IMG/VR virus record: IMGVR_UViG_3300023174_000036 | Location: 62,001 to 126,000 of that record | Reading direction: 5' to 3' (one strand) | DNA length: 64,000 nt | Shown here: positions 17,483-38,886 of the stretch, piece after piece | Layout: each line of letters opens with the position of its first letter | Position numbering within the stretch: position 1 is the stretch's first letter | Position numbers and translations under genes: made by a program | The notes under the pieces: generated by a model | Databases searched by the model: none | Told to the model about the DNA's origin: nothing | Seen by the model: the letters and a program-made list of their open reading frames with translations, nothing else

Positions 17483-18655
17483 TTAACTGAATTTAACGTT
17501 ACCACTAGTAATAGCAACGCGACCTAAGTAGTCAGCGGCATTACCTAGTGAGCTTGCTGTGTTTGACAACTCAACATAGCCATAACGTGTCATGAATGAT
17601 ACGACTGGCTCAAATGTTGATGGGTCTAAAACAACACCACTGCTCATCAATGGAATGTATGGGCAATAGAATGCAGGAGCATCAGACTCTGAACCGCCTT
17701 TGTAGCCGATTAGAACGTCTGTTGAATCTTGTGCATAGCTGTTTACATATACTTTCATTGCATTGTTCAATGTACCAACAAACTTGGTGTTTGTAGGTGC
17801 TTCGAATGTACCTTCTGTTGTACGAGCAAATGCGCTTGTAGTAGCAGACTGTAGAATTGTCAATGCAAATGGGCTAACAACTGCATAGTTACCAGCGCCA
17901 CGACGTGTACGCTGAGCAATCAAGTTAGCAACACGGTTGATCTGAACTGCCAATGCGGCATGCTCATCACCAACGAATGTGGCTGTACCAGATACAGCGG
18001 CTTGGTCGTAAGTTTGTGAAGCTGAACCAGCTAAAGAGATTAGAGATGCAATGATCTCTTGGTCAATTTCAGCTGTAATTTCTTGTGCAAGAGCGGCCAT
18101 GATTTCTGCTTCAACGTCAATGCCTTGTTGGGCTTGTGCGTCTTGAGCGGCTTCAAACGTCCAGCGAGCAGACAATTTACGTGTCTTAGCTTCAACTGTC
18201 TGTTTCAAGATTTGAATAGACATACGCTTACCTGCTTGACCTTCAAGAGTCGCTGTGCTAGCGGCTTTGGCAGTAGAACTGTCATTACCAGAATAAGCAG
18301 CCGCAATCTTGAATGGGCTCAATGCCTCTTCACCAGCTACTACAGAGTCAGCTGTTGCATTGTCTGCATAGCGTACACGTAGAGTGTGAATTTGGCCAAC
18401 TGGGCCAGTCATTGGTTGTACACCAACTAACTCGTTAGCAATAACGGTTGGCATAACACGACGAATCACCGGTAAAATTACGCGGTTTAATGTTGCAACG
18501 TTGCCGGCAGAAGTGGCACCAGCTGATGGGCTTTCTAGCAAATACTTGCGAGTATTTTCAAGTGTTACACCCATTACTGATTTTTTTGTGCCTTGTAAGC
18601 CTTCTAATAGGGCTTCTTTAGTTTCTGCCCAACGTCCGTTTAGTAGTTCTGACAT
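17483..18655 (-). CDS. gp23: Major capsid protein (T4 gp23 family)
   Basis: Hallmark motifs LVGVQPMTGPVGQI, VEAKTRKLSARWTFE, EIDQEII and AFYCPYIPL...DPSTFEPV..FMTRYG. Confidence 0.97.
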   Translation of the reverse strand: MSELLNGRWAETKEALLEGLQGTKKSVMGVTLENTRKYLLESPSAGATSAGNVATLNRVILPVIRRVMPTVIANELVGVQPMTGPVGQIHTLRVRYADNATADSVVAGEEALSPFKIAAAYSGNDSSTAKAASTATLEGQAGKRMSIQILKQTVEAKTRKLSARWTFEAAQDAQAQQGIDVEAEIMAALAQEITAEIDQEIIASLISLAGSASQTYDQAAVSGTATFVGDEHAALAVQINRVANLIAQRTRRGAGNYAVVSPFALTILQSATTSAFARTTEGTFEAPTNTKFVGTLNNAMKVYVNSYAQDSTDVLIGYKGGSESDAPAFYCPYIPLMSSGVVLDPSTFEPVVSFMTRYGYVELSNTASSLGNAADYLGRVAITSGNVKFS

Positions 18656-19780: not shown

Positions 19781-20416
19781 TTATTGGAGTTTGTTTATTA
19801 TTGATAATAAACTCTCTTTGAGATATTTCTGTGCCTTAGGATCACCTTTCACCTCTTGCGCTATGCGTAAGGCATTTAATCCGCCTCGACTATTCATCAA
19901 GTGTTCATAAATTGGTGTAGGATATGCTCCTGGAGCACTAGGTTGAGCTACCATATCTACTGTGATAATCTCAAAATCTGAAACTTCACCGGAACCGTCT
20001 TCTTTGACGTTTCCGGATCCGCGTGAACTGACACCCAATTTGACCCCTGACTCTAACATAGTACGAATCAATTGTCCCATTGGGGTTGGTAAAATTTTCA
20101 GTTTACCGTAACCATTAGGACCGTCCATCCACATATTTGTTATCATGTGGGACACACGGTCCAGGTTAATTTTTAGATCATCTGGATGATCCACTTCTCC
20201 GAGTACTGAATAACCGTTCTGAATCTGATCGTTTAGGGTTTTGACAGCCTTGCCAATCTCATTCACAGGGTAAACACGCTGGTTAGCGTTACGAATACCG
20301 CCCTGGATACAAATCCCGGACATGTATAAGTTTTTCCCATCTTTGTCATCAGACTCAACGATCATTTTTGCTTCGTTGAAACTGAGATTCTCTCGGAGAT
20401 ATAACATATTTTTCAA
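19781..20416 (-). CDS. gp21: Prohead core protease (T4 gp21 family)
   Basis: N.N.RVYP, GEVDHP (catalytic His), VSH, GVSSRGSG (catalytic Ser), and D.VAQPSAPGA motifs. Confidence 0.95.
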   Translation of the reverse strand: MKNMLYLRENLSFNEAKMIVESDDKDGKNLYMSGICIQGGIRNANQRVYPVNEIGKAVKTLNDQIQNGYSVLGEVDHPDDLKINLDRVSHMITNMWMDGPNGYGKLKILPTPMGQLIRTMLESGVKLGVSSRGSGNVKEDGSGEVSDFEIITVDMVAQPSAPGAYPTPIYEHLMNSRGGLNALRIAQEVKGDPKAQKYLKESLLSIINKLQ

Positions 20417-21692: not shown

Positions 21693-23426
21693 TTATGCGG
21701 CAGGTGCAGTTGCTGGGCCTGCAGGTGCAACTGGAGGAACCGCTCCTTCTTCAGGCATAGCATCTTCCATGTCTTCTGGAGGAGTCATGTCGCCTGCGGC
21801 TCCTAAGTCGCCTTCAATACCAGCGGCGCTGAGTCCTGCACTGCGTAGTTCGCCGGCAGCGTCAGTACTGGTTGGTTGACCTTTACCGCTTTCTTCGCCC
21901 CACATGCGTTCGTTTTCTGCTACTTCTTCGTCTGTTAATCCCAAGAAACGTTTTAGTGCAAATCGTTTGCTCATGTAAGGCACGGCTTGCACTGTGTTAA
22001 ATGTGTTGATACGTTCAGCATCAATACTGGCTTGCTTGCTACTTGCAAAGTTTAACGGCGGATTAAACTTTAATTCAAACAAGTTTGCATCTATATTCAT
22101 GCCTTTGAAATACATGAATCGTTTGAATTCCACATCAAAAACAGTTGCTACCAGTGCTTGTAATCGTTCACAATACTTGTTGAATCGCAGTTCTTGAATG
22201 TATGCTGTGCCCACACGTCCGTCATTAAAACTTGCTTGACTATCGTCTGCACCTGTTGGCAAGTAGCTACTGGGTATACGTAAACCACGGAATAACTTGT
22301 TGGTAAAATACTTTAAATCGTCAATTTCGCCAAGATTTGTGCCGCCTGCAAGTGTTTCTACCTTGCTGCCGCGACCTTCAGCTGTTGTTGGAAAGAAGTA
22401 ATCTTCGTTGATGCTTAGTGGATTATACGCTGAATCAATAACGTTTTGGCCGCCGCCGCTTTGACTTGGAATACGTCTTTGATGGATTTCGTTTTTAACA
22501 CGTTCTACAAATGCCATGGCCAAGTGACTTGGCATGTTGCCCACGTCAATATGAAACACTCTACGCTCCGGAGCACGTTGTATACGATAGATTAAAATTG
22601 CATCTTCAAGCAACTCTTTCTGTTTGTAAACTTTAAAAATGTTTTCTAAAAGACTGTTACCAAATGGAAAATTGTTGTCTAAACCTTCACTTAGACTCAA
22701 ATGAATCACATGTTCCGCATCAATAGCATGTTCAGTTTCGCTGATGCCAAATCTATTTGAGCCGCCACTTGTTGGAAAAGATCCGTTGGTGCCTTTGTTT
22801 GAGGCCATGCCGGTTAGGCCGCTGTTGGGCAATCCACCACCTGCATTTTTAGGGTTAATATTGGCAGTGATCTGTGTGGCCACCAAACTCATAAAGTTAG
22901 GAGCAAGATCTTTAACTATGTACTGCTCTGGCTTTTTGCCGTCACTTTCATTCACAATGACTTTGACCAGCTTGCTTGGATCCATCCAGTTCCACTTTTG
23001 TGTTTCAGGATCACGTATGAAAAAACAATCACCGTATTTGAAAGTATTGCGTAAAATTCTAAAGATTCTAATGTCAAACTGTTGCAACTTGACCCACTGT
23101 TGCAAGTACTCAGCTAATATTCTAACTTCGCTGTTAGTGGCTTTGTTTCTCCATTGCACAGTGAACGGACTTTTGCCGTCTTTGAGTTTTTGTGTGCAAA
23201 ATTCTGCAAGAATATCCAAAGCCGCATTGACTTCTGGATCGCTGTCCATGACTTCGTATTGTTGATAACGTTCAATTCTGTTTGGGCTACCTGTGTACAC
23301 ATCGGGCAAGTAGTTACTGTAGTTTGTCTGGCTTGGCCCAGGACGACTGGCACCACCCATATTTCCCGAAATAGGGCTAAGGGACGATGACACATCCGCA
23401 GGCGTAAAATATTTTTTCCATGACAT
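21693..23426 (-). CDS. gp20: Portal vertex protein (T4 gp20 family)
   Basis: LLEDAILIYRIQRAPERRVFHIDVGNMP, EDYFFP, RGSKVETLAGG.NLGEIDD.KYF and ELRF.K motifs. Confidence 0.96.
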   Translation of the reverse strand: MSWKKYFTPADVSSSLSPISGNMGGASRPGPSQTNYSNYLPDVYTGSPNRIERYQQYEVMDSDPEVNAALDILAEFCTQKLKDGKSPFTVQWRNKATNSEVRILAEYLQQWVKLQQFDIRIFRILRNTFKYGDCFFIRDPETQKWNWMDPSKLVKVIVNESDGKKPEQYIVKDLAPNFMSLVATQITANINPKNAGGGLPNSGLTGMASNKGTNGSFPTSGGSNRFGISETEHAIDAEHVIHLSLSEGLDNNFPFGNSLLENIFKVYKQKELLEDAILIYRIQRAPERRVFHIDVGNMPSHLAMAFVERVKNEIHQRRIPSQSGGGQNVIDSAYNPLSINEDYFFPTTAEGRGSKVETLAGGTNLGEIDDLKYFTNKLFRGLRIPSSYLPTGADDSQASFNDGRVGTAYIQELRFNKYCERLQALVATVFDVEFKRFMYFKGMNIDANLFELKFNPPLNFASSKQASIDAERINTFNTVQAVPYMSKRFALKRFLGLTDEEVAENERMWGEESGKGQPTSTDAAGELRSAGLSAAGIEGDLGAAGDMTPPEDMEDAMPEEGAVPPVAPAGPATAPAA

Positions 23427-23441
23427 ATAAGTGTTATATCC

Positions 23442-25967
23442 TTAACCGAATCTATTACCTGACAGTCGTTTAGTGGCTTTAACTTGCTTAGTTGCAGTTT
23501 CAACTGTTTCGGCGCTGTGTTCTATTAGTTGTCGTATGCTTGTATTTAACTGAATTAATTGTTCGTTAAGATCATTTAGGCCAACTTTGTTTGATTGTTC
23601 TTCAAACTTTGGTTCTTCGGTTTTGTATTCAATTTCTTCCAAATCATTTGGTACAGCTTTATCAGTACTGGGTTTGGTTATGGAATCTATAGACTCTGAT
23701 TCAGCATTGTTAATTTTAGCTCTGTTAATTTCAGGTGTTACAGCATTATTAATTTTAGCGGCTTGTGCTTCTACTTTCTTTTGAGCATCTACCTGGCCCA
23801 ATCCCTGTGATATATTTTTCTGTATATCAGTAATGCTTACTGATTTTGTGTTGGGTTCTGTAACAGTTTTAGTTGTGGTGCCCGCACTGATTCGAGCTTC
23901 TATCTTAGAAGATATTTCTAACATTTTTGCTTCAAGTGCTTTGGCCTGTGGATTATCTTTCATGGCCCGTATAACATCTATGCCTTTGGCATCTGGTCCA
24001 AGATTGCTTTTTACTTGAGATCGTATGCCATCTCTATCTGTTTGATATTGTGCTTTGACTGCTTCTAATTCTTTCTTAGCGGCTTTGGCATCATCATTTT
24101 CAACACTGGATCTGGTAGTAGAACCACCACCACTTACTGAACTAATTGTAGTTGTGATCTCTTTTAAACCGCTGGTAATTTTGCTAACATCAAGTCCACC
24201 AGCACCAACGGTTGGTGTTTTAGTTGTTGCAGATTTCATTACATCATTAATAGCATTGCTTGCTGAACCAGACAACAAGTTCTTTAATTGTTCAGGAGTT
24301 ACCACTGTTTCCCCTTTGTGTAATTTTGCCACTACATCTTTGGGTTCAGTTGCTTGTCCTATTTCACCTAGTGTACCGTGTTCGCGTTTAGGACCTTCGC
24401 CGGCTGCTTTTCGTTGTTTAGCAACTTCAGAAGACTGTCCTGGTGCCACAGTTTCTACTATTTTGGTGCCGGCTGCTTTAAATCGTTTATCGGCTTCATC
24501 TTGATTTGTGTTATTACCAAATGCTCGCTCTAATGTTTGTCTAACTGCATTGATTTTGTCAGGACTTTGTCCTAATTCTTTATTAAATCCTGCCAATGCG
24601 CCGCTTGCTGCCGCGGCATTCATCCTTGCAGATTCATATACCGAGTTTAGTGCTTGAGTAGCTCGTGCGCCTTCGTTTTGTGTACCCGGGGCTCCGTAAG
24701 GACGATCTCTGCCTTCTTGAGTTCTACCACTTATGGCTGCATCTCCCAGTCCAACTAGCTGTGCTTGTTGTGCTTGTTCAGCAGTTAGTCCTGTACGTTG
24801 TGCGGCACCTTGGCCAAATTTTTGAGTATTTTCTGCTTGAGCTCGTTCGTAAGCGGCTTTTTGATTTGGATCTTGTGTAGTCAGTGCTCGCTGTGCAAAT
24901 TGTTTGCTGTTTTGATATTGATTTGCTCTAGCAACTTCAGATCTCATGCGTTCTTCTGCCGCAATTTTTTGAGGATCGTCTTCAGCTAGTCCAGCAGTTC
25001 GTCTAACATCTCTGGCAGCTCGCATGTATTGCCCTGCTCGTCCACCGGTAGAAACTTGCAATTGTGTTCGTTGATCTTTACTAAGAGCGCCACCGGCTAT
25101 GATAGTACTGGTGATGTTTTGCATAGATTGCCCTAGTCCGGCAGTTGCTAATCTAGTTGCTTGTAATGCATCTCTAGTTTGATCATTGCCAACTGCTTGC
25201 AGTTCCAATTGCCCTCTAGCAGATTTGTTATACTCTTGCATACTTGCAATAATCTGTTCTCGCCCAACTCCAGTAACAGTTGACAGTCTGTTGATGTTAT
25301 TGGACATTTCAGCAGTCTTGGCCAATAACTCTTCTCTGCCTTCTTTTGAATTCAGTTGGGTAGTTTTGCCTCCAGCCGCAATGGCGGCAATTTGTGCAAT
25401 CTCTTCTGGACTTACCCCAGCTAATCCTTTTAACTTTTGTGCTTGTGGAGTACCTTGTACGTCTTTAGCAAACTCTAAAAATTTTCTAGAACTTAATTCA
25501 TTAGATTGGTCAATAGTTTTTAAACTGTTTCCAGCAGTCTTAGTTAATTGGTCAATATAGTCTTTACCGTTTTTATATCCTGCTTTTTGTGCGTCTGCGG
25601 TTAATTGTGTGTAGTCTAGCTGGCCTATTCCAATCTTATTTGCTTGGTTAGCTAAGTCTCTGTATTCTTCTATTAATTTATAACTTGCCTTGCCTAATTG
25701 CCCACCTATGGATGCAACAGCCTCTAAGCTATTTTTGGCAGCATCACTGGCATTTCTAACATTCATAAATCCACTAGCAAGCTGTGGTAATTCTCTTGTC
25801 ATCAGACCGAGGAAATCGCTAGTACCTTTATTAAAAATTTCTAGTGGGTTACTGGTTGGGGCAGCAACCGGAGAAGCGGCTTTCTTGGCTTCTGAATTGT
25901 TGCCTAGAGCTTCTTTTATTGCTTCAAGTAGCTTAGTTGCTATTTGTCCGTAATCTAACTCTGCCAT
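23442..25967 (-). CDS. Tape-measure-like / baseplate hub tail-length protein (~841 aa)
   Basis: Long A/Q/K-rich helical protein with an HGT.G...AKLHKGETVVTPEQ motif of the kind seen in tape-measure proteins; adjacent to a gp26-like gene. Start set at ATG 25967 after a GGGGA SD. Confidence 0.6.
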   Translation of the reverse strand: MAELDYGQIATKLLEAIKEALGNNSEAKKAASPVAAPTSNPLEIFNKGTSDFLGLMTRELPQLASGFMNVRNASDAAKNSLEAVASIGGQLGKASYKLIEEYRDLANQANKIGIGQLDYTQLTADAQKAGYKNGKDYIDQLTKTAGNSLKTIDQSNELSSRKFLEFAKDVQGTPQAQKLKGLAGVSPEEIAQIAAIAAGGKTTQLNSKEGREELLAKTAEMSNNINRLSTVTGVGREQIIASMQEYNKSARGQLELQAVGNDQTRDALQATRLATAGLGQSMQNITSTIIAGGALSKDQRTQLQVSTGGRAGQYMRAARDVRRTAGLAEDDPQKIAAEERMRSEVARANQYQNSKQFAQRALTTQDPNQKAAYERAQAENTQKFGQGAAQRTGLTAEQAQQAQLVGLGDAAISGRTQEGRDRPYGAPGTQNEGARATQALNSVYESARMNAAAASGALAGFNKELGQSPDKINAVRQTLERAFGNNTNQDEADKRFKAAGTKIVETVAPGQSSEVAKQRKAAGEGPKREHGTLGEIGQATEPKDVVAKLHKGETVVTPEQLKNLLSGSASNAINDVMKSATTKTPTVGAGGLDVSKITSGLKEITTTISSVSGGGSTTRSSVENDDAKAAKKELEAVKAQYQTDRDGIRSQVKSNLGPDAKGIDVIRAMKDNPQAKALEAKMLEISSKIEARISAGTTTKTVTEPNTKSVSITDIQKNISQGLGQVDAQKKVEAQAAKINNAVTPEINRAKINNAESESIDSITKPSTDKAVPNDLEEIEYKTEEPKFEEQSNKVGLNDLNEQLIQLNTSIRQLIEHSAETVETATKQVKATKRLSGNRFG

Positions 25968-25993: not shown

Positions 25994-26020
25994 TATAAAT
26001 AGCTATACATTATATTTATC
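25994..26020. promoter_or_regulatory. Pair of opposed late promoters: TATAAATA (+, 25994-26001) and GATAAATA (-, 26013-26020)
   Basis: Both match the gp55 consensus and lie in the 64-bp gap between divergent genes. Confidence 0.65.
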
Positions 26021-26031
26021 AGGAGTCAGAT

Positions 26032-26859
26032 ATGTCCCAAAATCCCTTACAACAGTTTTTTAGACAACCAAAAATTTATATTACATTGCCCAGCAAGGGT
26101 GTTTTTAATAGTCCAGAGTCGTTGTCGGGAACTTTTGAAAATATGCCAGTTTATGGCATGACTGGCATGGATGAAATTATTTTAAAGACTCCTGATGCAT
26201 TGATGTCCGGCGAAAGCACTGTTAAACTAATTCAAAGCTGTTGCCCCAGTATCAAAGATGCTTGGTCATTGACCACACTGGATACCAATCTAGTGTATGC
26301 CGCTATACGGATTGCCACTTACGGACATGAATTGTCAGTAACACAAACGTGCGCAGAATGTGAAACTGAAAATGATTTTGACATTGATTTGAATCATGTT
26401 GTAGAACATTATGGCAATTGCCATTACAATCACAAGTTGGTGTTGGATGGATTAACTGTTAAAACTAGACCGTTGACATTTAAAGAATCCAACGATTTTA
26501 GTTTGGAAAATTACAACTTGCAACAAAAATTAAATCAAGCAGATCAAATTGAAGATGTTACTGAAAAACAACGATTGTTCAAAGAACTGTTTGAAGAACT
26601 GTCAGTAACTCAACAGAAAATATTTTCAAAGAGTGTGGAAGCTGTTGAAGTTGGCGATCAGGTGGTTACTGATACAGTTTATATTGAAGAGTGGCTGAAA
26701 AATTGTGACAAGAGTGTGTTTGAAAAACTCAAAAAACATGTTGAAGACAACAGAACAGCTTGGGACATGCCCACATGGCCAGCAAAATGTGAAAAATGTG
26801 AAGCAGAGTCTAAGATTTATATTGAGCTTGATAACTCTAGTTTTTTCGACAACGCCTAA
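26032..26859 (+). CDS. gp26: Baseplate hub assembly protein / tail assembly chaperone (T4 gp26-like)
   Basis: P.IYITLPS.G N-terminus, MT..DE..L, IR.A..G, CxxC motifs (CAEC, CEKC) and a terminal SSFF; AGGAG SD. Confidence 0.8.
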   Translation: MSQNPLQQFFRQPKIYITLPSKGVFNSPESLSGTFENMPVYGMTGMDEIILKTPDALMSGESTVKLIQSCCPSIKDAWSLTTLDTNLVYAAIRIATYGHELSVTQTCAECETENDFDIDLNHVVEHYGNCHYNHKLVLDGLTVKTRPLTFKESNDFSLENYNLQQKLNQADQIEDVTEKQRLFKELFEELSVTQQKIFSKSVEAVEVGDQVVTDTVYIEEWLKNCDKSVFEKLKKHVEDNRTAWDMPTWPAKCEKCEAESKIYIELDNSSFFDNA

Positions 26860-27080
26860 TTAGATTCTCTCCCGAAGAGATACTTGAAGAACTAGTTAGG
26901 CTGGACAAACAGGCCAAAGAATTTAAACAAGAGTTGTTTAGAATCAGTTGGTACATGCGGGGAGGTGTAACAGTAAATGAACTACTGCACATCTACAGCT
27001 ATGAAGATCGACAGGCAATCTACGCTGTGATCAATGAAAACATTGAAATAACCAAAGAATCAAACATGCCTCTGTTGTAA
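26841..27080 (+). CDS. -1 frame extension of gp26 (gp51-like segment), reached by a probable programmed frameshift; alternatively a 41-aa ORF from ATG 26955
   Basis: The frame opens right after an in-frame TAG (26838-40), exactly at T_TTT_TTC (26841-47), and reads FFRQRLIRFSPEEILEELVRLDKQAKEFKQELFRISWYMRGGVTVNELLHIYSYEDRQAIYAVINENIEITKESNMPLL*. Confidence 0.7.
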   Translation, partial: FFRQRLIRFSPEEILEELVRLDKQAKEFKQELFRISWYMRGGVTVNELLHIYSYEDRQAIYAVINENIEITKESNMPLL

Positions 27081-27081
27081 G

Positions 27082-28281
27082 TTAATATCGTTTGACACGC
27101 ACATGATTGTTCATGCGATTGACTTCAAACCCGTTACCCATGTCTTCCCAATCACCGTTGGGATTTTTATTTGGCAACATTTTTCCAGCAGTATTTGTAT
27201 TGGTGGGATTAGTATCAGTTTGGCTATCAGCATCAGCTGGCGTTACTTTTCCAGCTTGTTTTTTCTTTTCTGCTTCAGCGTCTGCTGGATTGTTTGGATT
27301 GGGATAATCAGTTGGCAATAACCCAGCAGGAATGTCAGAGTCTTTGTAAGCAGTTGCTTTTAAAAACTTGACCCATTCTTTTTTAATTAAATCTTCAGTC
27401 CACACCAGCGGTTGACCAATCACACTGGCAATTGTGACTTTGTCGCTGAACAACAACGGACCAATAATAGGAATGGCATTGAGTTGCCACAGCATAAAGT
27501 TGTCAATGAAGTTTCTTACACTGAGGTCGCCGCCAAACTTGTGTGCGTCCAAGAATGACAACCATAAAGTTTTACCAGCAAGTCCAGTAACTTTGTTGGA
27601 AACAATAGCACTAGCCCAACCCAACACTGGCACTTTGTTCCATGCACTTGGGAAAGTTGCAACTAATTGTGCAAACAGCACTGCTAAAACTTCTTTGTGA
27701 TAATCGTGAAATGCTTCAAGATCAAATCCAGGCTTGCCATCTTCCGCAATGCCGTCTGGGCCAACTGACAGTTTATCCAATGCCCAGTCCATCTGTTTCC
27801 AGTATAGGTTTACTGCTTCCCAGATGTCTGCGGCTTGCCAAGCATACAGAACTTTTGATAGACCGTTTGCAGTTAATGATTTCCAAGATGATCGTGCTTT
27901 ACGAGCTTGATTTCTTATGTGCGCTGGTAACACCGCAGGAGCATCAGGTTCTTCTCTAGGTTTGGGTTTTGGCTTATTGATGGCTTTCCAGTCGTTGTAC
28001 AATTTGTTGTGATAACCAACTGTGTCTTTTTCAACTTGTTCAATAAATTCTGGATCGTTCTTGTATTGACTCTTGCTGATGCGCTCGTCCAGCATTTTAT
28101 CCAGTTCAGCACGAGGCACTTTGATGCCTTTTTTGGTATAAGTGTTGAATACTTGAGAGCCTATGTCAGTGGCCACTTCACGACCAAATGCGGCTTTGGC
28201 AGTTTGTTTGCCAAGAAACTTCCACGCATATTCAGCAGTTTCACCTGCGGCACCTTCAAGAATAACATCCAACACTTTCAT
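27082..28281 (-). CDS. Hypothetical late protein (399 aa) with hydrophobic segments; candidate internal head protein
   Basis: Has its own perfect late promoter; N-terminus MKVLDVILE; hydrophobic stretches in the C-terminal half. Confidence 0.7.
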   Translation of the reverse strand: MKVLDVILEGAAGETAEYAWKFLGKQTAKAAFGREVATDIGSQVFNTYTKKGIKVPRAELDKMLDERISKSQYKNDPEFIEQVEKDTVGYHNKLYNDWKAINKPKPKPREEPDAPAVLPAHIRNQARKARSSWKSLTANGLSKVLYAWQAADIWEAVNLYWKQMDWALDKLSVGPDGIAEDGKPGFDLEAFHDYHKEVLAVLFAQLVATFPSAWNKVPVLGWASAIVSNKVTGLAGKTLWLSFLDAHKFGGDLSVRNFIDNFMLWQLNAIPIIGPLLFSDKVTIASVIGQPLVWTEDLIKKEWVKFLKATAYKDSDIPAGLLPTDYPNPNNPADAEAEKKKQAGKVTPADADSQTDTNPTNTNTAGKMLPNKNPNGDWEDMGNGFEVNRMNNHVRVKRY

Positions 28282-28302: not shown

Positions 28303-28310
28303 TATTTATA
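28303..28310 (-). promoter_or_regulatory. Late promoter TATAAATA
   Basis: Exact T4 late consensus, 22 nt upstream of the ATG at 28281. Confidence 0.75.
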
Positions 28311-28787: not shown

Positions 28788-29213
28788 TTAGCCTTTGAGT
28801 ATATGCGAACCATGTACACGGACACTGATCTGGCCGTTATAATAGTCTTTTGATTCTAGAACTTTGTGGGTAAACTGTTCTCTGGCCTCGATGTAAGAGC
28901 ATTGCGCCTTGGATGTGCAATAATATAGGATTTCTCTTGTGAAGTTTTCTTTGCCTAATTTCAATACGTCCACGTTTAATTCCAGGTTTGACCCATAATA
29001 ATCACGCCAGTCGCTGTCGACTTTGCTACGTATTTTCTTTTTTTTCTTAGTGCCGTTCTTAAGTTTAACTACTTTGTAGCTGGTCTTAGCGAACTTGGCT
29101 AGTTTTTTGCCTATATATTTGCGTCCAGAGATGACATTTGTTATCAAGTACACGAAACCAACACAATCTTCGGGCAGTGTTTCAACAATTTCGTTTTGAT
29201 AAGTCCATGACAT
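28788..29213 (-). CDS. Stand-alone GIY-YIG family nuclease (T4 endonuclease II-like size) with a Lys-rich insertion
   Basis: GFVYLIT...RKYIGKK motif, a conserved E (YIEAREQ) and N (YYNG); 141 aa with no appended DNA-binding domain. Confidence 0.8.
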   Translation of the reverse strand: MSWTYQNEIVETLPEDCVGFVYLITNVISGRKYIGKKLAKFAKTSYKVVKLKNGTKKKKKIRSKVDSDWRDYYGSNLELNVDVLKLGKENFTREILYYCTSKAQCSYIEAREQFTHKVLESKDYYNGQISVRVHGSHILKG

Positions 29214-29228
29214 GCAGTAGTTAGCATA

Positions 29229-29480
29229 TCATTCCGCCGTGTCACCTTTCTTTTGAGCCTTGGTTTCGTCCAAATGTACTCTGTACTGTTGAACTTTTTC
29301 CCTGCGTTCACGTGCAATGATACGAATCTGCGCTAGCCAGTAGCGCATATTTTCTCCTGCCCGTCTTGTGCCTTTGTTGATCCAGTTTTGATTTGCTTTG
29401 AAATATTGCCTAAAGGCTTCCATTAAACGCTCATGCGTTTCTTCGTCCTGATAATCTAATGGAGGTACCCGTTTGCTCAT
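29229..29480 (-). CDS. Small basic helical protein (83 aa), possibly related to histone-H1-like Hc1 proteins
   Basis: HE.L..AF..Y...N..W..KG.R.AG...R..L..I...ARERR..VQ pattern; TAATG-coupled to gp46. Confidence 0.55.
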   Translation of the reverse strand: MSKRVPPLDYQDEETHERLMEAFRQYFKANQNWINKGTRRAGENMRYWLAQIRIIARERREKVQQYRVHLDETKAQKKGDTAE

Positions 29481-31258
29481 TATTCTGTTACTTCTAAGTC
29501 GTTGGCATAGTTTGTAAAGCCATTTTCCTTAATAACTTTAAGAACATTGTTCACACGACCAATTAATTCGTCCTTGTGACTGATCAAGAAAATATTCTTC
29601 TTGCGTTCACGTGCCATTTTCTTAAGTACAGCCAATGCGCCTTCAACTCCTGATGCGTCTAAGCCGTTATCCACTAACTCGTCAACAAACAACAAGTTAA
29701 TTGATTGATATAAACTTTCCCAAACATCACGGAAACTCCAACTCAAACCTAGTATCAAACGATTGCGTTCACCACGGCTCAAGTTATCAAAGTCAAGATC
29801 TTGCCCCAGCTGTGTGATAATAACAGTTAAATCGTTTTGGAACACCACAGTATGCGGTAATCCCATCTTGTCAAGATAATATGTAAGTCTATTGTTGAGA
29901 TATGCCAAGTTCTGATCAATAATCTTCTTACGGATAAAACTATCCTTGCTGGTCAACAGCTTTAGCAAGAACTCTTGATGATCTTTAAGCGTGTTCAGTT
30001 GATTAACATTGTCCCATGAGATAGTCTGCATGGCAGTGTGCTGTAGTTCGTCAATTTGCTCTTGATAAGGATCCGTTTCGCCTGCTTTGATTGTTAATTG
30101 CGTTTCCAGTGTCTTGAGATTGTTTTGATGTTTGAGTGCTTGCTCAACAGAGTCGTAATAAGTGTTGGGACGTCCAGACACTTCACCAATGCCTTTGATC
30201 TCTTTCATGATCTTGGTCAAGTCGCTGTTAACTTTGTCCAAATACTTTTGTGCTTCTGCCAAATGTTGTTGAGCAGTGGTACTCATTTCTTCATGTTTGT
30301 GATCATGTAGTTCTTGCTCACAAGCGTGACACTTTTTGTCTTTCAACTTAGCAAGCTCGTCAGCGTACTTTTTTACGCTTCGCTCCGCTTGCGCTGTCGC
30401 GCTGTCTAACGTAGCCCGTTCCTTATTTAGGCTTTTCAGCTTCGCTGTCTGTTCTTCGAACAGTTTCAAGTCATTATGCTTGGTCAGCTCAGAATCAATG
30501 TCTACATTTTCTAATTCCACAATAGCTCTTGCTATTTTTTCTATTTCTTCAGTGTGCTGATTGTTCCATGCATTTTGTCTAGATGTTAATGAGTCAATAC
30601 TTTGTTGTATTTTTTCGTTAGACTTTTTTGCGGCTTCAATATCTGCATTTTCTTGATAGATATTGTCCTTGGTAGTCTTAATCATCTCTTTAAGACCTTC
30701 AGCTTTTTCACTGAGTAAGGTAATACCAAGCAACTGCTCAATAATTACACGCTGATCATTTGCCTTCATAGATAAGAAAGGCTCTGTATAAGTGTTAAGC
30801 GCAACAATGTGCCTAAACATATCATGACTCATGCCCAACAAGTCGTCAAGATCTCGTTGCGTTTCACGCATATCGCCTTGAGCATCGTCAGTTTCTTCTG
30901 TATCCTGTGCTTGGTTATTAACAAAGAATTGCAACACGTTGGGTTTACGCCCACGTTCAATGCGATATTCAGTGCCGTCTTTATCAAATGTAAGTGTAAC
31001 CAACATATTTTTATTGTTGATTTTATTGATCAAGTTGTCTTTTTTGATGTTAGTGAGCGCATTACCGTATAACGCATAGCTTAATGCATTTACAATAGTG
31101 GTTTTACCAGTACCGTTACGTGATCCGCTGTCATCACCGCCTTGATCCAAGTTCTCTCCAAGGACAAGTGTTAGATTTTCTTTATCAAAGTTTACAGCCT
31201 GGGTTTGATTACCCACACTCATGAAATTCTTAACTGTTAAATCTTTAATCTTTATCAT
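29480..31258 (-). CDS. gp46: Recombination ATPase subunit (T4 gp46 / Rad50 / SbcC family)
   Basis: Walker A RNGTGKT, coiled coils with a CHAC zinc hook, LSRGE signature, Walker B LLFVDE, and ISH H-loop. Confidence 0.95.
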   Translation of the reverse strand: MIKIKDLTVKNFMSVGNQTQAVNFDKENLTLVLGENLDQGGDDSGSRNGTGKTTIVNALSYALYGNALTNIKKDNLINKINNKNMLVTLTFDKDGTEYRIERGRKPNVLQFFVNNQAQDTEETDDAQGDMRETQRDLDDLLGMSHDMFRHIVALNTYTEPFLSMKANDQRVIIEQLLGITLLSEKAEGLKEMIKTTKDNIYQENADIEAAKKSNEKIQQSIDSLTSRQNAWNNQHTEEIEKIARAIVELENVDIDSELTKHNDLKLFEEQTAKLKSLNKERATLDSATAQAERSVKKYADELAKLKDKKCHACEQELHDHKHEEMSTTAQQHLAEAQKYLDKVNSDLTKIMKEIKGIGEVSGRPNTYYDSVEQALKHQNNLKTLETQLTIKAGETDPYQEQIDELQHTAMQTISWDNVNQLNTLKDHQEFLLKLLTSKDSFIRKKIIDQNLAYLNNRLTYYLDKMGLPHTVVFQNDLTVIITQLGQDLDFDNLSRGERNRLILGLSWSFRDVWESLYQSINLLFVDELVDNGLDASGVEGALAVLKKMARERKKNIFLISHKDELIGRVNNVLKVIKENGFTNYANDLEVTE

Positions 31259-32268
31259 AGGCTATTATAAATGTTCAGTAATAGATTCTTATCGAACTGA
31301 TCAGAATCAATGTTTACGATTTGACTGCTAACAATTTGATCAACACTTTCAAAAGATTGCACATCAATATTGGTATTAATTTCAATCTCTTTCTTTTCCG
31401 CAATCAAGGTAAGTTCGCGAATATTATAATCAGCAATAAACTTTTCTTTAATGAAACTTGCTTCTTCATAACTGATATCAATATCCAGTGCAACCCGCAA
31501 ATGTTGTTTGGGTTTGATAATTTTATCAGCATCGTCGATCAATTGGCTTAGTTTAACAGTACGGAACGTAGGTTGAGCAGGCCAACTGTGATATTCAGGT
31601 TGCCCATCCCACTCTAATATCATCATACCGCGGTCGTCATCCCATGTATCTGCATAATTGTGGGGAAACGCATTGCCAATATAGATCATATTACGCTGTT
31701 GCTGACGTTTGTGGAAGTGTCCACTAAATCCTAGTTCGTAATTTTGAAAACTATCTAGTTGAATCTCGCCATGATCTGGCATCTGTACCATAGCGTTCAT
31801 AAAGAAGCTGGGCAATTCAAAGTGTCCAAAGATGTACTTGCCGCCTTTCTTACCAATGCTTCGCCACTCATCTCCTACAAGCCACGGGCAGAGTGTAACA
31901 TCCCCAATGGTAGTCGGTTCGTGTACCACAGTGATTCCGGGAATATACTTGCCAAACTCAACGGAATGGATATCACGTTTGTCTTTATAATATAAATCAT
32001 GATTACCAGGAAAAAAGTAAAACTGATCAAATGCTTTACCCAGTTTTTCCAGTGCTCGAAGCGAGTAGTCCATAGTAGTGATATTAAGACTATTGCGATT
32101 GTGATGCCAATCGCCCATAAAAATTCCTGTGTCACACCCTTCCTCCTTTGCTTTAGCAATGTACCAATCCACAAAGTCTTCGCAATCTTGATTGTGTACA
32201 CTACTATTGCTTTTTAATCCAAAGTGTATGTCTGTGAAACACGCTACTTTTTTAAACAAATTACTCAC
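31255..32268 (-). CDS. gp47: Recombination nuclease subunit (T4 gp47 / Mre11 / SbcD family)
   Basis: Metallophosphoesterase motifs DIHFG, GDWHH, GNHD, GHFE and SGHFH. Start reassigned to GTG 32268, which overlaps the gp55 stop. Confidence 0.95.
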   Translation of the reverse strand: MSNLFKKVACFTDIHFGLKSNSSVHNQDCEDFVDWYIAKAKEEGCDTGIFMGDWHHNRNSLNITTMDYSLRALEKLGKAFDQFYFFPGNHDLYYKDKRDIHSVEFGKYIPGITVVHEPTTIGDVTLCPWLVGDEWRSIGKKGGKYIFGHFELPSFFMNAMVQMPDHGEIQLDSFQNYELGFSGHFHKRQQQRNMIYIGNAFPHNYADTWDDDRGMMILEWDGQPEYHSWPAQPTFRTVKLSQLIDDADKIIKPKQHLRVALDIDISYEEASFIKEKFIADYNIRELTLIAEKKEIEINTNIDVQSFESVDQIVSSQIVNIDSDQFDKNLLLNIYNSL

Positions 32269-33094
32269 TAGACGTGTCCTCGTTGTGTCGTTTAAGTGCG
32301 GCCGCATGTTCGCCAGCACCAGTTCTGCTGTAACTAGGGTTCATGCCATTTATTTCCAAAATGTCATCACGAATATTTTGGTTACGCTTCTCGATATTAA
32401 TAACACGTACAAAACTATTTGTAACAGCCGCCGTGAAATACGCAAACGGGTTATCCGATTTACTTTCATCAAACTGTAATCCTATTTGTGTTAATTGCAA
32501 GATTGCCTGACCCTTCATTTCGTCGTTGTAAGTGTAACCACGAACATTGCCTCGTGTGGCATATCGCTCACACAATTTTAACATCATCCGAGCTAAAGTT
32601 GGAGTAATTTGGCCCGCATCTTTATCAAACTTGCCTTTGATTAGATCACCCTTCCAATGACTCTTGCCCACACATACTAGTTCGTCTTTGTCATCAAACT
32701 TCCAGTGTTGGAATGGAGGAAAGTTTACTTTGTCTCTATGATCAGCAAGTGTTTTTGGATTTTTCTTTCTGATACCGTTAAGTGGAATATGATCAAATGT
32801 CATGATCCTGAATACTAAATCGGTTTTTAACATTTTTTTGTAGTCTACTTCGCAGTCTGCTTGTTTGACTTTTTCACCAGCGGCTTTGCGCCTTTGGTAT
32901 TCCGCATCGCCAATGCGTTTGGCCCTTGCACGTTTGGCTTCTGCTATGGTTCTGATGTTAATTTTAGATATATCGGATAAAATCAAATCATATTGGTGAT
33001 AAATTGGGTCTGTAAAACTGCAATATGAGCTTTTACTTCTATGTATTTCCAACAACATATCCTTGTTGTTTAGGTAATTAACTTTCACTGTCAT
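32261..33094 (-). CDS. gp55: Late-transcription sigma factor (T4 gp55 family)
   Basis: YLNNKD N-terminus, N.RGYTY.DEM, and FD..KS.NPFAYFT....NSF.R.I..EK motifs; adjacent to gp47/gp46 as in T4-like phages. Confidence 0.9.
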   Translation of the reverse strand: MTVKVNYLNNKDMLLEIHRSKSSYCSFTDPIYHQYDLILSDISKINIRTIAEAKRARAKRIGDAEYQRRKAAGEKVKQADCEVDYKKMLKTDLVFRIMTFDHIPLNGIRKKNPKTLADHRDKVNFPPFQHWKFDDKDELVCVGKSHWKGDLIKGKFDKDAGQITPTLARMMLKLCERYATRGNVRGYTYNDEMKGQAILQLTQIGLQFDESKSDNPFAYFTAAVTNSFVRVINIEKRNQNIRDDILEINGMNPSYSRTGAGEHAAALKRHNEDTSSE

Positions 33095-36730: not shown

Positions 36731-38397
36731 TGGGTTCTGAAAATAATTTTAACTATGCGTCCACAGGATCACCTGATTCCAGGCCAGGACCGTTTCTTGC
36801 CACAGTAATCGGCCACCAAGACCCCACATACATGGGCACCATTGAAGTGGAGTTGTTAAGACCAACAGGCAACACCAGCGACGAAACTTCAATCCATCAA
36901 GTAAAATATATGAGTCCATTTTACGGAGTTACTTCAGCAAGTCACCTTGGCGAAAACGATGACTATAGTAGCACACAAAAAAGTTATGGCTGGTGGGCAG
37001 TACCTCCTGATGTGGGTACCACGGTTGTGGTAATTTTCATTGACGGCGATGCTCGTCGTGGTTACTGGATTGGTTGTGTACAAGATGAAGGCATGAATTT
37101 TATGGTGCCTGGTCTTGCGGCAACACAAAAAGTTGTTGAAGATGTAGAGTCTGATAATGCAGGTAATTATGGCAGAGTTCCAGTAGCAGAATACAATAAG
37201 AAAGTAAATGATTTAAAAGACCCAGACGTTACACAATTACTTAAACCTAAACATCCGTTGGCAGACGCTTTGGATCGTCAAGGTTTGTTGTTTGATGACA
37301 TTAGAGGTATCACAACCAGCAGTGCCAGACGAGAAGTTCCAAGTATGGTGTTTGGTATCAGCACACCAGGCCCAGTTGATAAACGAGATGGTGCTCCCCG
37401 CGGCCGCATTGGAAAAAAAGAATGGAAAATTGACAATGCATTTGTTGGTAGACTTGGCGGCAGCACTTGGGTAATGGACGACGGCGACTCTAGATTTTTG
37501 CGAAAGAAACCAGCAAGCGAAGGCCCTCCAGAATATGCATCTTTAGAAGATGGTGATACTGATGGTGATGTAGAAATTCCACACAACGAATTAATTCGTA
37601 TTAGAACTAGGACTGGACATCAAATACTGTTACACAACAGTGAAGATTTAATTTATATTACCAATGCTAGAGGAACAGCATGGATTGAATTGACCAGTGA
37701 CGGTAAGATAGATGTTTATGCAAAAGATAGTATAAGTGTAAGAACAGAAAACGATTTAAATTTTTATGCTGATAGAGACATCAATATGGAAGCAGGACGC
37801 AACTTTAATCTAAAAGTTTCGGAGCGTCATCAAACGGAAGTGGGGAAAGATAAAATTTGTATTGTAAATGGAAATGTTGCCATAAAAGTTGACGGTACAC
37901 AGGACGAAACAATCACCGGAGCCCACACCCAATCATTTGAAGCAACATGGGATGTTACTACTGGTGAGCAGACCAATATAACTGTTGGAGCAGGATTTGA
38001 TTTGAACACAAGTGACTCTAACAAATTAACATCTGGTGGAAATATGGAAATCGCCGCCGCTAACACTACAATATCTGGTGGAAATATTAATCTTAATGGT
38101 CCATCGGCCGCATCGGCTGGATCAGCTACTGCCGCAACAGTGCCAGAACCTTTAGAAACAATTGACAATCCTACAGAAATAGAAGGCGACACTATTACTA
38201 GTATCATGGCCCGTGTTCCTACTACTGAACCATATCCACATCATGAGAATTTAGATGGTTCTAAGTTTAAGCCAGACGCAACGGACAGAGAAGCAGTAAC
38301 CGCTATAGAAGTTCCAACAGCTTGGAAAACATATTCAACGACTAATGATACATTTAAAATAATTCCGCCAGAAGCACCACCAGAGGAGCAACAATAA
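36730..38397 (+). CDS. gp5: Baseplate central spike (gp5/VgrG-like), no lysozyme domain recognised
   Basis: N-terminal OB-fold motifs (DP.YMG.IEV, PPDVGTTVVV.F..G....GYWIG), RTRTGHQI, and beta-helix repeats (VNGN, VDGT, ITGA, INLN). Confidence 0.75.
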   Translation: MGSENNFNYASTGSPDSRPGPFLATVIGHQDPTYMGTIEVELLRPTGNTSDETSIHQVKYMSPFYGVTSASHLGENDDYSSTQKSYGWWAVPPDVGTTVVVIFIDGDARRGYWIGCVQDEGMNFMVPGLAATQKVVEDVESDNAGNYGRVPVAEYNKKVNDLKDPDVTQLLKPKHPLADALDRQGLLFDDIRGITTSSARREVPSMVFGISTPGPVDKRDGAPRGRIGKKEWKIDNAFVGRLGGSTWVMDDGDSRFLRKKPASEGPPEYASLEDGDTDGDVEIPHNELIRIRTRTGHQILLHNSEDLIYITNARGTAWIELTSDGKIDVYAKDSISVRTENDLNFYADRDINMEAGRNFNLKVSERHQTEVGKDKICIVNGNVAIKVDGTQDETITGAHTQSFEATWDVTTGEQTNITVGAGFDLNTSDSNKLTSGGNMEIAAANTTISGGNINLNGPSAASAGSATAATVPEPLETIDNPTEIEGDTITSIMARVPTTEPYPHHENLDGSKFKPDATDREAVTAIEVPTAWKTYSTTNDTFKIIPPEAPPEEQQ

Positions 38398-38840: not shown

Positions 38841-38861
38841 AATACGCAGTTAATCTTTGAA

Positions 38862-38869: not shown

Positions 38870-38886
38870 CAATACTAGGATAAAAT

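What the first reader, a model, noticed from the sequence alone, without database searches (positions are those of the whole stretch)
26832..27080. Probable programmed -1 frameshift making gp26 and a gp26-'gp51' fusion: a lambda G/GT-style chaperone pair in a T4-like phage
Seen: gp26 ends AGT TTT TTC GAC AAC GCC TAA, containing a canonical X_XXY_YYZ heptamer (T_TTT_TTC, 26841-47) three codons before the stop. The -1 frame is closed by TAG immediately before the heptamer, opens exactly at it, and runs to TAA at 27078-80, filling the gap to the next gene. Its first ATG is 38 codons in and has no evident SD. Predicted products are 275 aa and ~349 aa. Established: many long-tailed phages make tail assembly chaperones G and GT by a -1 frameshift next to the tape-measure gene, whereas T4-like gp26 and gp51 are normally annotated as separate genes. 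Inference: gp26/gp51 here are the G/GT equivalents, and the adjacent tape-measure-like gene fits that model.
Basis: partly seen in the sequence, partly recalled or inferred. Interest (0 to 1): 0.8.

Follow-up and report, generated by a model that had tools for sequence, protein, structure and literature searches.

The report
Frameshifted tail chaperone in jumbo phage
A giant freshwater phage very probably makes a short and a long version of its tail-assembly chaperone from one gene by letting ribosomes slip back one base, a strongly conserved but already published trick of T4-like phages.

Summary
The gp26-like gene (26032-26859, Pfam PF12322) carries an in-phase T_TTT_TTC at 26841-47. The -1 frame opens there and runs 77 codons to 27080.

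It is not chance. All 75 related IMG/VR loci with a complete 3' end (33-100% identity) keep the heptamer and a 77-codon -1 ORF (one copy is 72 codons). That ORF's amino acids are conserved from its first codon, while the 0-frame tail varies from 1 to 14 codons.

A hairpin 6 nt downstream shows covariation. Ten cultured jumbo phages and 77 of 78 cyanophage-type loci show the same site.

T4 gp51 is a gp26 paralogue with a C-terminal tail. The short cyanophage 'gp51' is that tail. So the shift product corresponds to T4 gp51, a hub-assembly chaperone. In SP-15-like phages the gene sits between the tube and tape-measure genes.

However, the concept is published (Vladimirov, Gautam and Davidson 2022, seen only through citing papers). 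This is therefore a new member of a known kind in a jumbo phage.

Transcriptional slippage at the T run is not excluded. No protein evidence exists.

The parts
25994..26001 (+). TATAAATA, a T4-type late-promoter-like octamer 30 nt upstream of the gp26 start
   Evidence: only two copies in the window, both just upstream of gene starts. A gp55-like late sigma factor is encoded at 32261-33094. Promoter function is inferred, not tested.
26021..26025 (+). AGGAG Shine-Dalgarno of the gp26-like gene, 6 nt before the ATG
   Evidence: Read from the sequence. No comparable motif precedes ATG 26955 or TTG 26934 in the -1 frame.
26032..26859 (+). gp26-like gene giving the short product of 275 aa (tail/hub assembly chaperone, Pfam PF12322)
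   Evidence: Pfam PF12322 at 61.6 bits against a cut-off of 24.5, and phrog_150 baseplate hub. AF2 model with pLDDT 86 and pTM 0.80. BFVD structural matches to baseplate hub (assembly) proteins of many myophages. Four invariant Cys residues.
26841..26847 (+). Slippery heptamer T_TTT_TTC in the X_XXY_YYZ phase
   Evidence: Invariant in 75/75 jumbo-type loci and 77/78 cyanophage-type loci. Present in eight cultured jumbo phages and P-SSM4; XacN1 has T_TTT_TTT, as has CM1. The preceding codon always ends in T although its amino acid varies. The second Phe codon is TTC in 51/51 sequences although TTT makes up 85% of Phe codons upstream.
26848..26853 (+). 6-nt spacer between the heptamer and the hairpin
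26854..26901 (+). Stimulatory hairpin candidate. The 10-bp stem pairs 26854-63 with 26892-901 around a 28-nt loop that holds a small inner stem. The 0-frame stop TAA 26857-59 lies in the 5' arm.
   Evidence: Fold of -16.5 kcal/mol with z = -3.2. On 50 sequences, 85.8% of cells are paired against 74% when shuffled and 14-52% when slid. 42 cells have changes on both sides against 10.8 expected, in 8 of 11 pairs. The Arg codon in the 3' arm is AGG in 31 and GGG in 8 of 50 sequences. There is no Rfam match.
26847..27080 (+). -1 frame extension of 77 codons plus TAA. It is added to residues 1-272 to give the 349-aa long product.
   Evidence: It is 77 codons in 74 of 75 loci (72 in one) and conserved from codon 1: an invariant Arg coded by all four CGN codons. 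Column entropy in codons 2-36 is 1.0/0.7/1.33 by -1-frame codon position, a coding signature. The AF2 model has pLDDT 91.6 and is a helical domain whose long first helix (residues 9-36) lies upstream of the first Met. Gene callers elsewhere call pieces of it as 55-108-aa hypothetical proteins.
27146..27163 (+). Terminator-like hairpin followed by a T-rich tail, 66 nt after the end of the extension
   Evidence: This is a consensus match only.
23442..25967 (-). Divergent neighbour of 841 aa counted from its ATG, a tape-measure-like virion protein
   Evidence: No Pfam or PHROG hit. ESM Atlas feature hits to TMP_3, TMP_2 and PhageMin_Tail clusters at 0.90-0.91, which are leads only. The RaK2 protein at the same position is annotated as similar to a tape measure protein. 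The PA5oct protein at that position is virion-associated by MS and 798 aa long, for a 136-nm tail (PMC3936114). Correspondence to the window's gene rests on gene position between the portal gene and gp26, not on an alignment.

Best explanation
The gp26-like gene encodes the short form (275 aa) of a T4-type tail/hub assembly chaperone.

Proposed mechanism. A minority of ribosomes decoding TTT-TTC at 26842-47 slip back one base on T_TTT_TTC, both tRNA-Phe re-pairing. A hairpin starting 6 nt downstream helps. These ribosomes continue in the -1 frame for 77 codons and make a 349-aa long form with an extra three-helix C-terminal domain.

Relation to known systems. The two forms correspond to T4 gp26 (short) and gp51 (long), which T4 encodes as two paralogous genes. 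They are the functional analogue of lambda G and GT. By inference, the common part holds the tape-measure protein during tail initiation, the extension docks it to the tube or hub, and neither form stays in the virion.

Shown: the sequence architecture, its conservation, coding selection on the -1 frame from the slip site, hairpin covariation, and the paralogy of gp26 and gp51.

Inferred: that slippage is ribosomal, its efficiency, and the chaperone roles of each part.
For: - Architecture.
- Jumbo-type loci: 75/75 keep the in-phase heptamer and the -1 ORF (77 codons in all but one 72-codon copy), while the 0-frame tail varies from 1 to 14 codons and is not conserved.
- The first -1 codon is always Arg, using all four CGN codons. 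The coding periodicity of the -1 frame is already present in codons 2-36.
- The window has no ATG, GTG or TTG in the first 29 -1 codons. The PA5oct extension has no Met at all.
- Hairpin: z = -3.2; 85.8% paired against 14-52% when slid; 42 double-change cells; forced AGG/GGG codons. PA5oct has a hairpin 5 nt after its heptamer. Cyanophage-type loci have their own hairpin at 6 nt, 77.6% paired against 23-44% when slid.
- The same site occurs in 121Q, PA5oct, Atu_ph07, RaK2, fHe-Yen9-04, CBB, SCTP-2, Phosso, XacN1, CM1 and P-SSM4 and in 77/78 cyanophage-type loci.
- T4 gp51 matches PF12322 over residues 1-201. The P-SSM4 'gp51' maps to the C-terminal part of phrog_634, which covers T4 gp51 147-246. 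The cyanophage shift product aligns end to end with T4 gp51 (E 3e-8). The jumbo shift product aligns with the cyanophage one through the junction (E 7e-12).
- One locus, L143, has the two parts fused in one frame.
- Chaperone role: gp26 and gp51 are listed as hub assembly chaperones, and gp51 is absent from particles (PMC3004832). In SP-15, LIS04, HSE3 and Mel-JY01 the gene lies between the tube gene and the next long ORF, which is annotated as tape measure in LIS04 and HSE3.
- Published concept.
Against: - There is no protein or ribosome data.
- The RNA-library contig shows only the genomic T6 run and cannot show rare variants.
- U_UUU_UUC efficiency in the unknown host is not known.
- The extension shows no significant sequence similarity to the T4 or cyanophage gp51 tail.
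- The gp26 model has no structural match to any solved protein, solved chaperones included.
- The gene is not between the tube and tape-measure genes here, and the tape-measure identity of the neighbour is a lead only.
- Hairpin arms lie in conserved coding sequence, so part of the pairing signal could come from protein constraint.
- In the more distant loci L049, L069 and L076 no convincing hairpin was found (z between -0.6 and +0.1).
Confidence: 0.78

Rival explanations
1. Transcriptional slippage. RNA polymerase adds one U while copying the T6 run, so a fraction of mRNAs encode the long form in a single frame. Ribosomes do not shift.
For: - The common denominator across the family is a T run at the Phe-Phe codons.
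- In SP-15, LIS04 and Mel-JY01 a T6 or T7 run occurs in a different phase, with the extension in the +1 frame. A phase-independent mechanism would explain that.
- XacN1 and CM1 have T7.
- The title of Vladimirov et al. [quoted passage not shown] I could not read the paper.
Against: - The run is exactly six T in 51/51 jumbo-type and 72/72 cyanophage-type non-redundant sequences and is never preceded by T. To my knowledge, efficient bacterial slippage needs about 8-9 identical bases.
- The phase is always X_XXY_YYZ.
- Conserved hairpins sit 5-6 nt downstream in two lineages with different sequences. That is the classical -1 frameshift layout and has no known role in polymerase slippage.
- HSE3 and GXN1 have the +1 arrangement with TTC TTT and no run.
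- Assembled RNA and DNA contigs carry T6. This is weak evidence, since rare variants are dropped.
Confidence: 0.12
2. Two separate genes. The -1 ORF is translated on its own, by coupling or re-initiation after the gp26 stop or from an internal start, giving a free small protein as annotated in 121Q, fHe-Yen9-04, CBB and the cyanophages.
For: - Some genomes have an ATG 2-4 codons after the heptamer, for example 121Q with TAATG, many cyanophage-type loci, and the annotated P-SSM4 gp51.
- Gene callers routinely call it as a separate ORF.
Against: - That ATG is not conserved. It is Leu in many cyanophage-type loci, where the first Met comes only 18-33 codons in.
- In the window's clade the first Met is usually residue 37, inside the invariant WYMRGG motif. 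PA5oct has none.
- Residues 1-36 are under coding selection and form the first helix of a confidently predicted domain.
- There is no Shine-Dalgarno motif before ATG 26955.
- A separate gene gives no reason for an invariant in-phase heptamer.
- In T4 the tail is covalently joined to a gp26-like domain.
Confidence: 0.06
3. Chance open frame. The heptamer exists only because the family ends in Phe-Phe, and the -1 ORF is not expressed.
For: Phe-Phe near the C-terminus is a family feature that T4 gp26 also has (FFELL).
Against: - T4 encodes its Phe-Phe as TTC TTT.
- Relatives keep TTT TTC plus a preceding wobble T against codon usage.
- A 77-codon frame stays open in nearly every copy, with amino-acid conservation and codon periodicity, across relatives down to 33% identity.
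Confidence: 0.01

Closest known systems
T4 gp26 and gp51 (hub/tail assembly chaperones; identified as the T4-like TAC pair by Vladimirov, Gautam and Davidson, Virology 2022, known here only through citing papers)
   Same: Same protein family: PF12322 hits the window protein, T4 gp26 and T4 gp51. There is a short form, and a long form that equals the short-type domain plus a C-terminal tail. Both carry the Phe-Phe motif at the junction.
   Different: T4 uses two divergent paralogous genes. Its gene 26 ends TTC TTT GAG TTA CTA TAA with no slippery site and is followed by gene 25. The window uses one gene plus a -1 shift. Its 77-aa tail is not detectably similar in sequence to the T4 gp51 tail.
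gp26 and the short 'gp51' of T4-like cyanophages (for example P-SSM4)
   Same: Identical heptamer T_TTT_TTC in the same phase, a -1 ORF starting with Arg, a 0-frame stop 1-3 codons later, and a hairpin about 6 nt downstream.
   Different: The cyanophage tail is 58-68 aa and clearly homologous to the T4 gp51 C-terminus (phrog_634). It often has an ATG four codons in and is annotated as its own gene. Sullivan et al. 2010 noted it is only about 20% of the T4 gp51 length. The hairpin sequences differ.
Lambda gpG/gpGT and the conserved tail-chaperone frameshift of long-tailed phages (Levin 1993; Xu, Hendrix and Duda 2004; from my own knowledge)
   Same: A -1 shift on a heptamer near the end of the short ORF. 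The long form is the short form plus an extra domain and is made in a small fixed proportion. There is an association with the tape-measure gene. In SP-15-like relatives the gene occupies the same slot between the tube and tape-measure genes.
   Different: The protein fold is unrelated as far as tested (no PDB match). The protein is about twice as long and carries two CxxC pairs. Here it is not between the tube and tape-measure genes, and it is divergent from the tape-measure-like gene. The heptamer differs (G_GGA_AAG in lambda). It has a downstream hairpin; to my knowledge lambda has no reported stimulatory structure.
T7 gene 10A/10B -1 frameshift at G_GUU_UUC
   Same: tRNA-Phe slips from UUC to UUU in a bacterial ribosome. 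It is cited together with the T4-like TAC poly-T sites in PMC12846349.
   Different: It is a capsid gene with a different heptamer, and it needs a distant 3' element (my own knowledge).
Transcriptional slippage on homopolymer runs (for example Thermus dnaX and IS elements; from my own knowledge)
   Same: A run of T at the point where the frames change.
   Different: The run is only 6 nt, phase-locked and followed by a hairpin.

Membership tests
Pfam PF12322 T4_baseplate (gp26/gp51 family) | HMM match above the gathering score | tested here: met
   61.6 bits against a cut-off of 24.5, covering residues 60-272. phrog_150 at 3.9e-20. BFVD structural matches to baseplate hub (assembly) proteins, with TM up to 0.88.
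Pfam PF12322 T4_baseplate (gp26/gp51 family) | Long form carries the gp51-type C-terminal tail (phrog_634) | tested here: inconclusive
   The window extension gives no phrog_634 hit. hhalign of extension profiles gives E = 0.15, and there is no match to the T4 gp51 C-terminus. The position, the junction (FF|R..L), the length and a shared [LM]..[SP]..[ED]R motif agree.
Programmed -1 frameshift tail assembly chaperone pair (G/GT type) | Second ORF in the -1 frame overlapping the end of the first, without a conserved start of its own | tested here: met
Programmed -1 frameshift tail assembly chaperone pair (G/GT type) | In-phase X_XXY_YYZ heptamer in the overlap, conserved in relatives | tested here: met
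   75/75 and 77/78 loci plus 11 cultured phages (ten jumbo phages and P-SSM4).
Programmed -1 frameshift tail assembly chaperone pair (G/GT type) | Gene lies between the tail tube gene and the tape-measure gene | tested here: not met
   In the window it lies between a divergent tape-measure-like gene and an unknown convergent gene, with no tube gene adjacent. The feature is met by family members in SP-15, LIS04, HSE3 and Mel-JY01.
Programmed -1 frameshift tail assembly chaperone pair (G/GT type) | Fold related to solved tail assembly chaperones | tested here: not met
   Foldseek of a confident model (pLDDT 86) against the PDB gave a best E of 0.76. phmmer against PDB sequences gave nothing.
Programmed -1 frameshift tail assembly chaperone pair (G/GT type) | Both products are made in a fixed ratio, are needed for tail assembly and are absent from virions | not testable with these tools
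   Only T4 genetics as reviewed in PMC3004832 is available.
Transcriptional slippage site | Long homopolymer run (about 8-9 or more) whose phase is free | tested here: not met
   The run is exactly T6, phase-locked and never preceded by T.
Rfam frameshift elements | Match to a curated frameshift-stimulating RNA family | tested here: not met
   No Rfam match at E <= 1 in 26700-27200.

The most novel reading that the evidence does not exclude
The gp26-family chaperone may be a natural series of interchangeable ways to make a short and a long form at the same Phe-Phe codons.

- A -1 shift with lineage-specific hairpins in proteobacterial jumbo phages and cyanophages.
- A +1 arrangement in SP-15-like Firmicute phages, Mel-JY01 and LR756508, some without any T run.
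- Two paralogous genes in T4.
- A straight fusion in one metagenomic genome (L143).

If the 2022 paper covers only classical T4-like phages, three things would be new: the extension to the RaK2/121Q/PA5oct/Atu_ph07 jumbo phages, the hairpins, and the +1 class. They would also argue for ribosomal rather than polymerase slippage.
Probability: 0.35. Interest if true: 0.6.

Novelty: new member of a known kind. Interest (0 to 1): 0.42.

Why it matters
- It explains why no database record examined here annotates the long product. PA5oct leaves the region blank, 121Q, CBB and the cyanophages call a free small ORF, and one Yersinia phage calls the gene a metal ATPase.
- It explains the long-noted oddity that cyanophage gp51 is only a fifth of the T4 gp51 length.
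- It gives jumbo phages of the RaK2/121Q/PA5oct type a candidate tail assembly chaperone and, next to it, a candidate tape measure.
- For recoding research, the family offers a very deeply conserved bacterial U_UUU_UUC site with covarying hairpins.

The principle itself is already in the literature, so the gain is annotation and breadth rather than a new mechanism.

Tried and rejected
- DNA search of the locus against GenBank phages found no match.
- BLASTP of the window gp26 against T4 gp26, and of the extension against T4 gp51, gave nothing. The link needs profiles.
- RNAalifold on all 50 sequences predicted no consensus structure. The stem only shows when named and counted.
- Folds of the distant loci L049, L069 and L076 were not better than shuffles.
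- Extension profiles against the cyanophage or T4 tail were not significant.
- Foldseek of gp26 against the PDB gave no match. Foldseek of the extension against BFVD gave only small uncharacterised phage proteins at E >= 0.1.
I repeated it with permitted rows only.
- Laid contigs cannot show rare U insertions.
- SP-15 relatives in IMG/VR: only SP-15 itself was found.
- Vladimirov et al. 2022 is not held in the library. Its content is known only from two citing sentences.
- The jumbo-phage papers that name these phages in the searchable library show no occurrence of 'frameshift' or 'tail assembly chaperone'.
Full report
**1. Observation.** ORF 26032-26859 (+) encodes 275 aa and ends AGT TTT TTC GAC AAC GCC TAA. 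T_TTT_TTC occupies 26841-47 in the X_XXY_YYZ phase. The -1 frame is closed by TAG 26838-40, opens at the heptamer and runs to TAA 27078-80. A slip gives 272 + 77 = 349 aa. The first ATG in that frame is at 26955 and the only earlier alternative start is TTG 26934. Neither has a Shine-Dalgarno motif like the AGGAG before the gp26 start. Among 44 long stop-to-stop ORFs of the window, three have an in-phase XXXYYYZ near their end. Only this one is followed by a long -1 ORF that no known gene explains.

**2. What the gene and genome are.** The protein matches Pfam PF12322 (T4_baseplate, 61.6 bits against a cut-off of 24.5) and phrog_150 'baseplate hub'. The window is identical to part of a 356-kb IMG/VR contig. 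The nearest cultured relatives share only 25-30% identity. They are jumbo phages: 121Q/PBECO4, RaK2, PA5oct, Atu_ph07, XacN1 and others.

The window carries a T4-like core:
- major head protein 17483-18655
- prohead protease 19781-20416
- portal 21693-23426
- gp46/47-like nuclease 29480-32319
- gp55-like late sigma factor 32261-33094
- gp5-, gp25- and gp6-like baseplate genes 36730-42339

So it is 'T4-like' only in the broad sense.

**3. Conservation in relatives.** Of 76 IMG/VR loci encoding relatives (33-100% identity), 75 have a complete 3' end. All 75 have in-phase TTTTTTC, and in 74 of them the -1 ORF after it is 77 codons; one copy is 72 codons.
- The 0-frame tail after the heptamer is 1 to 14 codons long and not conserved.
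- The -1 peptide is conserved from its first residue (R..L..S..EI...L..L....K.FK.ELFRISWYMRGGV...).
- The first -1 codon is always Arg and uses all four CGN codons, so there is amino-acid selection with free synonymous change.
- Column entropy by -1-frame codon position is 1.0/0.7/1.33 in codons 2-36. That is the same coding signature as downstream and as in gp26 itself.
- The usual first Met is residue 37, inside the invariant WYMRGG motif.
- The codon before the Phe-Phe always ends in T although it encodes Ser, Asn, Thr, Gly or Asp. The second Phe is TTC in 51/51 non-redundant sequences although 85% of upstream Phe codons are TTT.

**4. RNA structure.** Six nucleotides after the heptamer a 10-bp stem (26854-63 with 26892-901) closes a 28-nt loop. 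The 0-frame stop lies in its 5' arm. The window folds at -16.5 kcal/mol, z = -3.2. Counted on 50 non-redundant sequences, 85.8% of cells pair, against 74% when shuffled and 14-52% when the partner is slid. There are 42 cells changed on both sides against 10.8 expected, in 8 of 11 pairs. The Arg codon in the 3' arm is AGG or GGG in 39 of 50 sequences, which points to an RNA-level constraint. RNAalifold on the whole set found nothing, distant loci have no convincing hairpin, and there is no Rfam match. PA5oct has a similar hairpin 5 nt after its heptamer. The cyanophage-type clade has a different one at 6 nt, 77.6% paired against 23-44% when slid, with one pair seen as TA/GC/AT.

**5. Cultured phages.**
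- In-phase T_TTT_TTC plus a 70-77-codon -1 ORF occurs in 121Q, PA5oct, Atu_ph07, RaK2, fHe-Yen9-04, CBB, SCTP-2 and Phosso.
- XacN1 and CM1 have T_TTT_TTT.
- The PA5oct extension contains no Met and lies in an unannotated gap.
- None of the annotated records examined carries a joined (slippage) feature.

**6. Link to gp51.**
- In T4, genes 26 and 51 are divergent. Gene 26 ends ...FFELL with TTC TTT and is followed by gene 25.
- PF12322 matches both T4 gp26 (residues 1-206) and T4 gp51 (1-201, E 4e-52). gp51 is therefore a gp26 paralogue with about 48 extra C-terminal residues.
- In cyanophage P-SSM4 the 61-aa 'gp51' follows gp26 in the -1 frame after the same heptamer. It maps to the part of phrog_634 that covers the C-terminus of T4 gp51.
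- Of 78 cyanophage-type loci, 77 keep the heptamer and a 58-68-codon -1 ORF conserved from codon 1. The ATG used for annotation is Leu in many of them.
- The virtual shift product aligns end to end with T4 gp51 across the junction (E 3e-8).
- The jumbo shift product aligns with the cyanophage one through the junction, E 7e-12. Beyond the first residues, however, the window's extension is not significantly similar to the gp51 tail.
- One locus, L143, has the site 2 nt shorter and the two parts in one frame.

**7. Chaperone identity.** Leiman et al. list gp26 and gp51 as hub assembly chaperones and state that gp51 is required but absent from the particle (PMC3004832). In SP-15, LIS04, HSE3 and Mel-JY01 the family member lies in the order sheath, tube, gp26-like gene, then the next long ORF, which is annotated as tape measure in LIS04 and HSE3. 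That is the classical chaperone slot.

In the window the divergent neighbour (23442-25967, 841 aa) has no family hit. It does resemble tape-measure clusters by language-model features at 0.90-0.91, which is a lead only. The RaK2 protein at the same position was annotated as tape-measure-like. The PA5oct protein at that position is virion-associated and 798 aa long, for a 136-nm tail (PMC3936114). That is about 0.17 nm per residue, the usual tape-measure scaling (my own knowledge). These correspondences rest on gene position between the portal gene and gp26, not on an alignment.

**8. Structures.** The gp26 model is confident (pLDDT 86, pTM 0.80). It matches predicted baseplate hub (assembly) proteins of many myophages but no solved structure. 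It has two invariant CxxC pairs. The extension folds with pLDDT 91.6 into helices 9-36, 43-48 and 52-72. The part upstream of the first Met is therefore an integral helix.

**9. Mechanism and rivals.**
- *Ribosomal -1 slippage* fits the evidence best: phase lock, exact T6C, a hairpin at 5-6 nt in two lineages, and a near-cognate tRNA-Phe shift as in T7 gene 10.
- *Transcriptional slippage* is not excluded. The run of T is the family's common feature, and in SP-15, LIS04 and Mel-JY01 a T6-T7 run stands in another phase with the extension in the +1 frame. However, HSE3 and GXN1 have the +1 arrangement without a run, the run here is short, and polymerase slippage gives no role to the hairpins.
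- *Independent initiation* is contradicted by the missing or unconserved start codons and by the conservation of residues 1-36.
- *Reads:* DNA contigs of three runs and an RNA-library contig (26811-27076) carry the genomic T6. This rules out an assembly error but says nothing about rare transcripts. One of the DNA runs may be the window's own source.

**10. Novelty.** PRFect's authors summarise Vladimirov, Gautam and Davidson (Virology 2022) as showing that some T4-like phages carry a short gene and a long fusion gene instead of frameshifting (PMC10885494). A 2025 paper cites the same work for poly-T -1 slippery sequences in the TAC-N genes of T4-like phages (PMC12846349). I could not read the paper itself.

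The concept is therefore known. What may go beyond it is the extension to the RaK2/121Q/PA5oct/Atu_ph07 jumbo phages, the covarying hairpins and the +1 class. The jumbo-phage papers naming these phages that I could search show no occurrence of 'frameshift' or 'tail assembly chaperone'. Sullivan et al. 2010 recorded the short cyanophage gp51 without an explanation.

**11. Verdict.** This is a new member of a known kind. It has moderate interest, mainly for annotation and as a well-conserved model site.

Noticed in passing
L143:2195-2230 (IMGVR_UViG_3300049043_000112, 236-kb contig): The slip site is 2 nt shorter (TCTTTTTGG), so the gp26-like domain and the 'gp51' tail form one continuous ORF (...EGLTSFWLGMAHVDL...). 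This is either a natural fusion that makes only the long form or an assembly error in the T run.
   Followed up: partly
L090:2188-2413 (SP-15), L173 (LIS04), L174 (HSE3), L175 (GXN1), L176 (Mel-JY01), L088 (LR756508): In these phages the extension ORF lies in the +1 frame relative to the gp26-like gene. SP-15 and LIS04 have T6 and Mel-JY01 has T7, starting at codon position 1. HSE3 and GXN1 have TTC TTT CGT with no run. In SP-15, LIS04, HSE3 and Mel-JY01 the gene sits in the order sheath, tube, gp26-like gene, then the next long ORF (annotated tape measure in LIS04 and HSE3). This suggests a +1 recoding class in the same family.
   Followed up: partly
L083:1189-2064 (Yersinia phage fHe-Yen9-04) and L078:4852-5076 (PA5oct): The fHe-Yen9-04 gp26 homologue is annotated as a 'Lead, cadmium, zinc and mercury transporting ATPase', probably because of its CxxC pairs. 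In PA5oct the Met-less extension ORF lies in an unannotated 224-nt gap.
   Followed up: partly
window 25994-26001 (+) and 28303-28310 (-): These are the only two TATAAATA octamers in 64 kb (about 6 expected by chance). Both lie 20-30 nt upstream of gene starts: gp26 and the 399-aa ORF 27082-28281. They look like T4-type late promoters, and a gp55-like sigma factor is encoded at 32261-33094.
   Followed up: partly
window 28788-29213 (-): A SegE-like GIY-YIG homing endonuclease ORF (Pfam PF19835, 5e-32) sits between the structural genes and the gp46/47-like nuclease genes.
   Followed up: no
window 42339-56807 (+): A single 4822-aa ORF directly follows the gp6-like baseplate wedge gene. It was not analysed.
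   Followed up: no
window 26350-26361 and 26788-26799 (residues C107, C110, C253, C256): Two CxxC pairs are invariant in all 56 aligned jumbo-phage gp26 homologues, which suggests a zinc-binding site. To my knowledge that is unusual for a tail assembly chaperone.
   Followed up: no
window 27082-28281 (-): A convergent 399-aa ORF ends 1 nt after the extension's stop codon. It has no Pfam or PHROG match. A terminator-like hairpin on the + strand (27146-27163) lies inside its 3' end.
   Followed up: no
L081:1980-1986 (XacN1) and L087:1971-1977 (Stenotrophomonas phage CM1): These two phages use T_TTT_TTT instead of T_TTT_TTC, and their extensions begin with Tyr rather than Arg.
   Followed up: no
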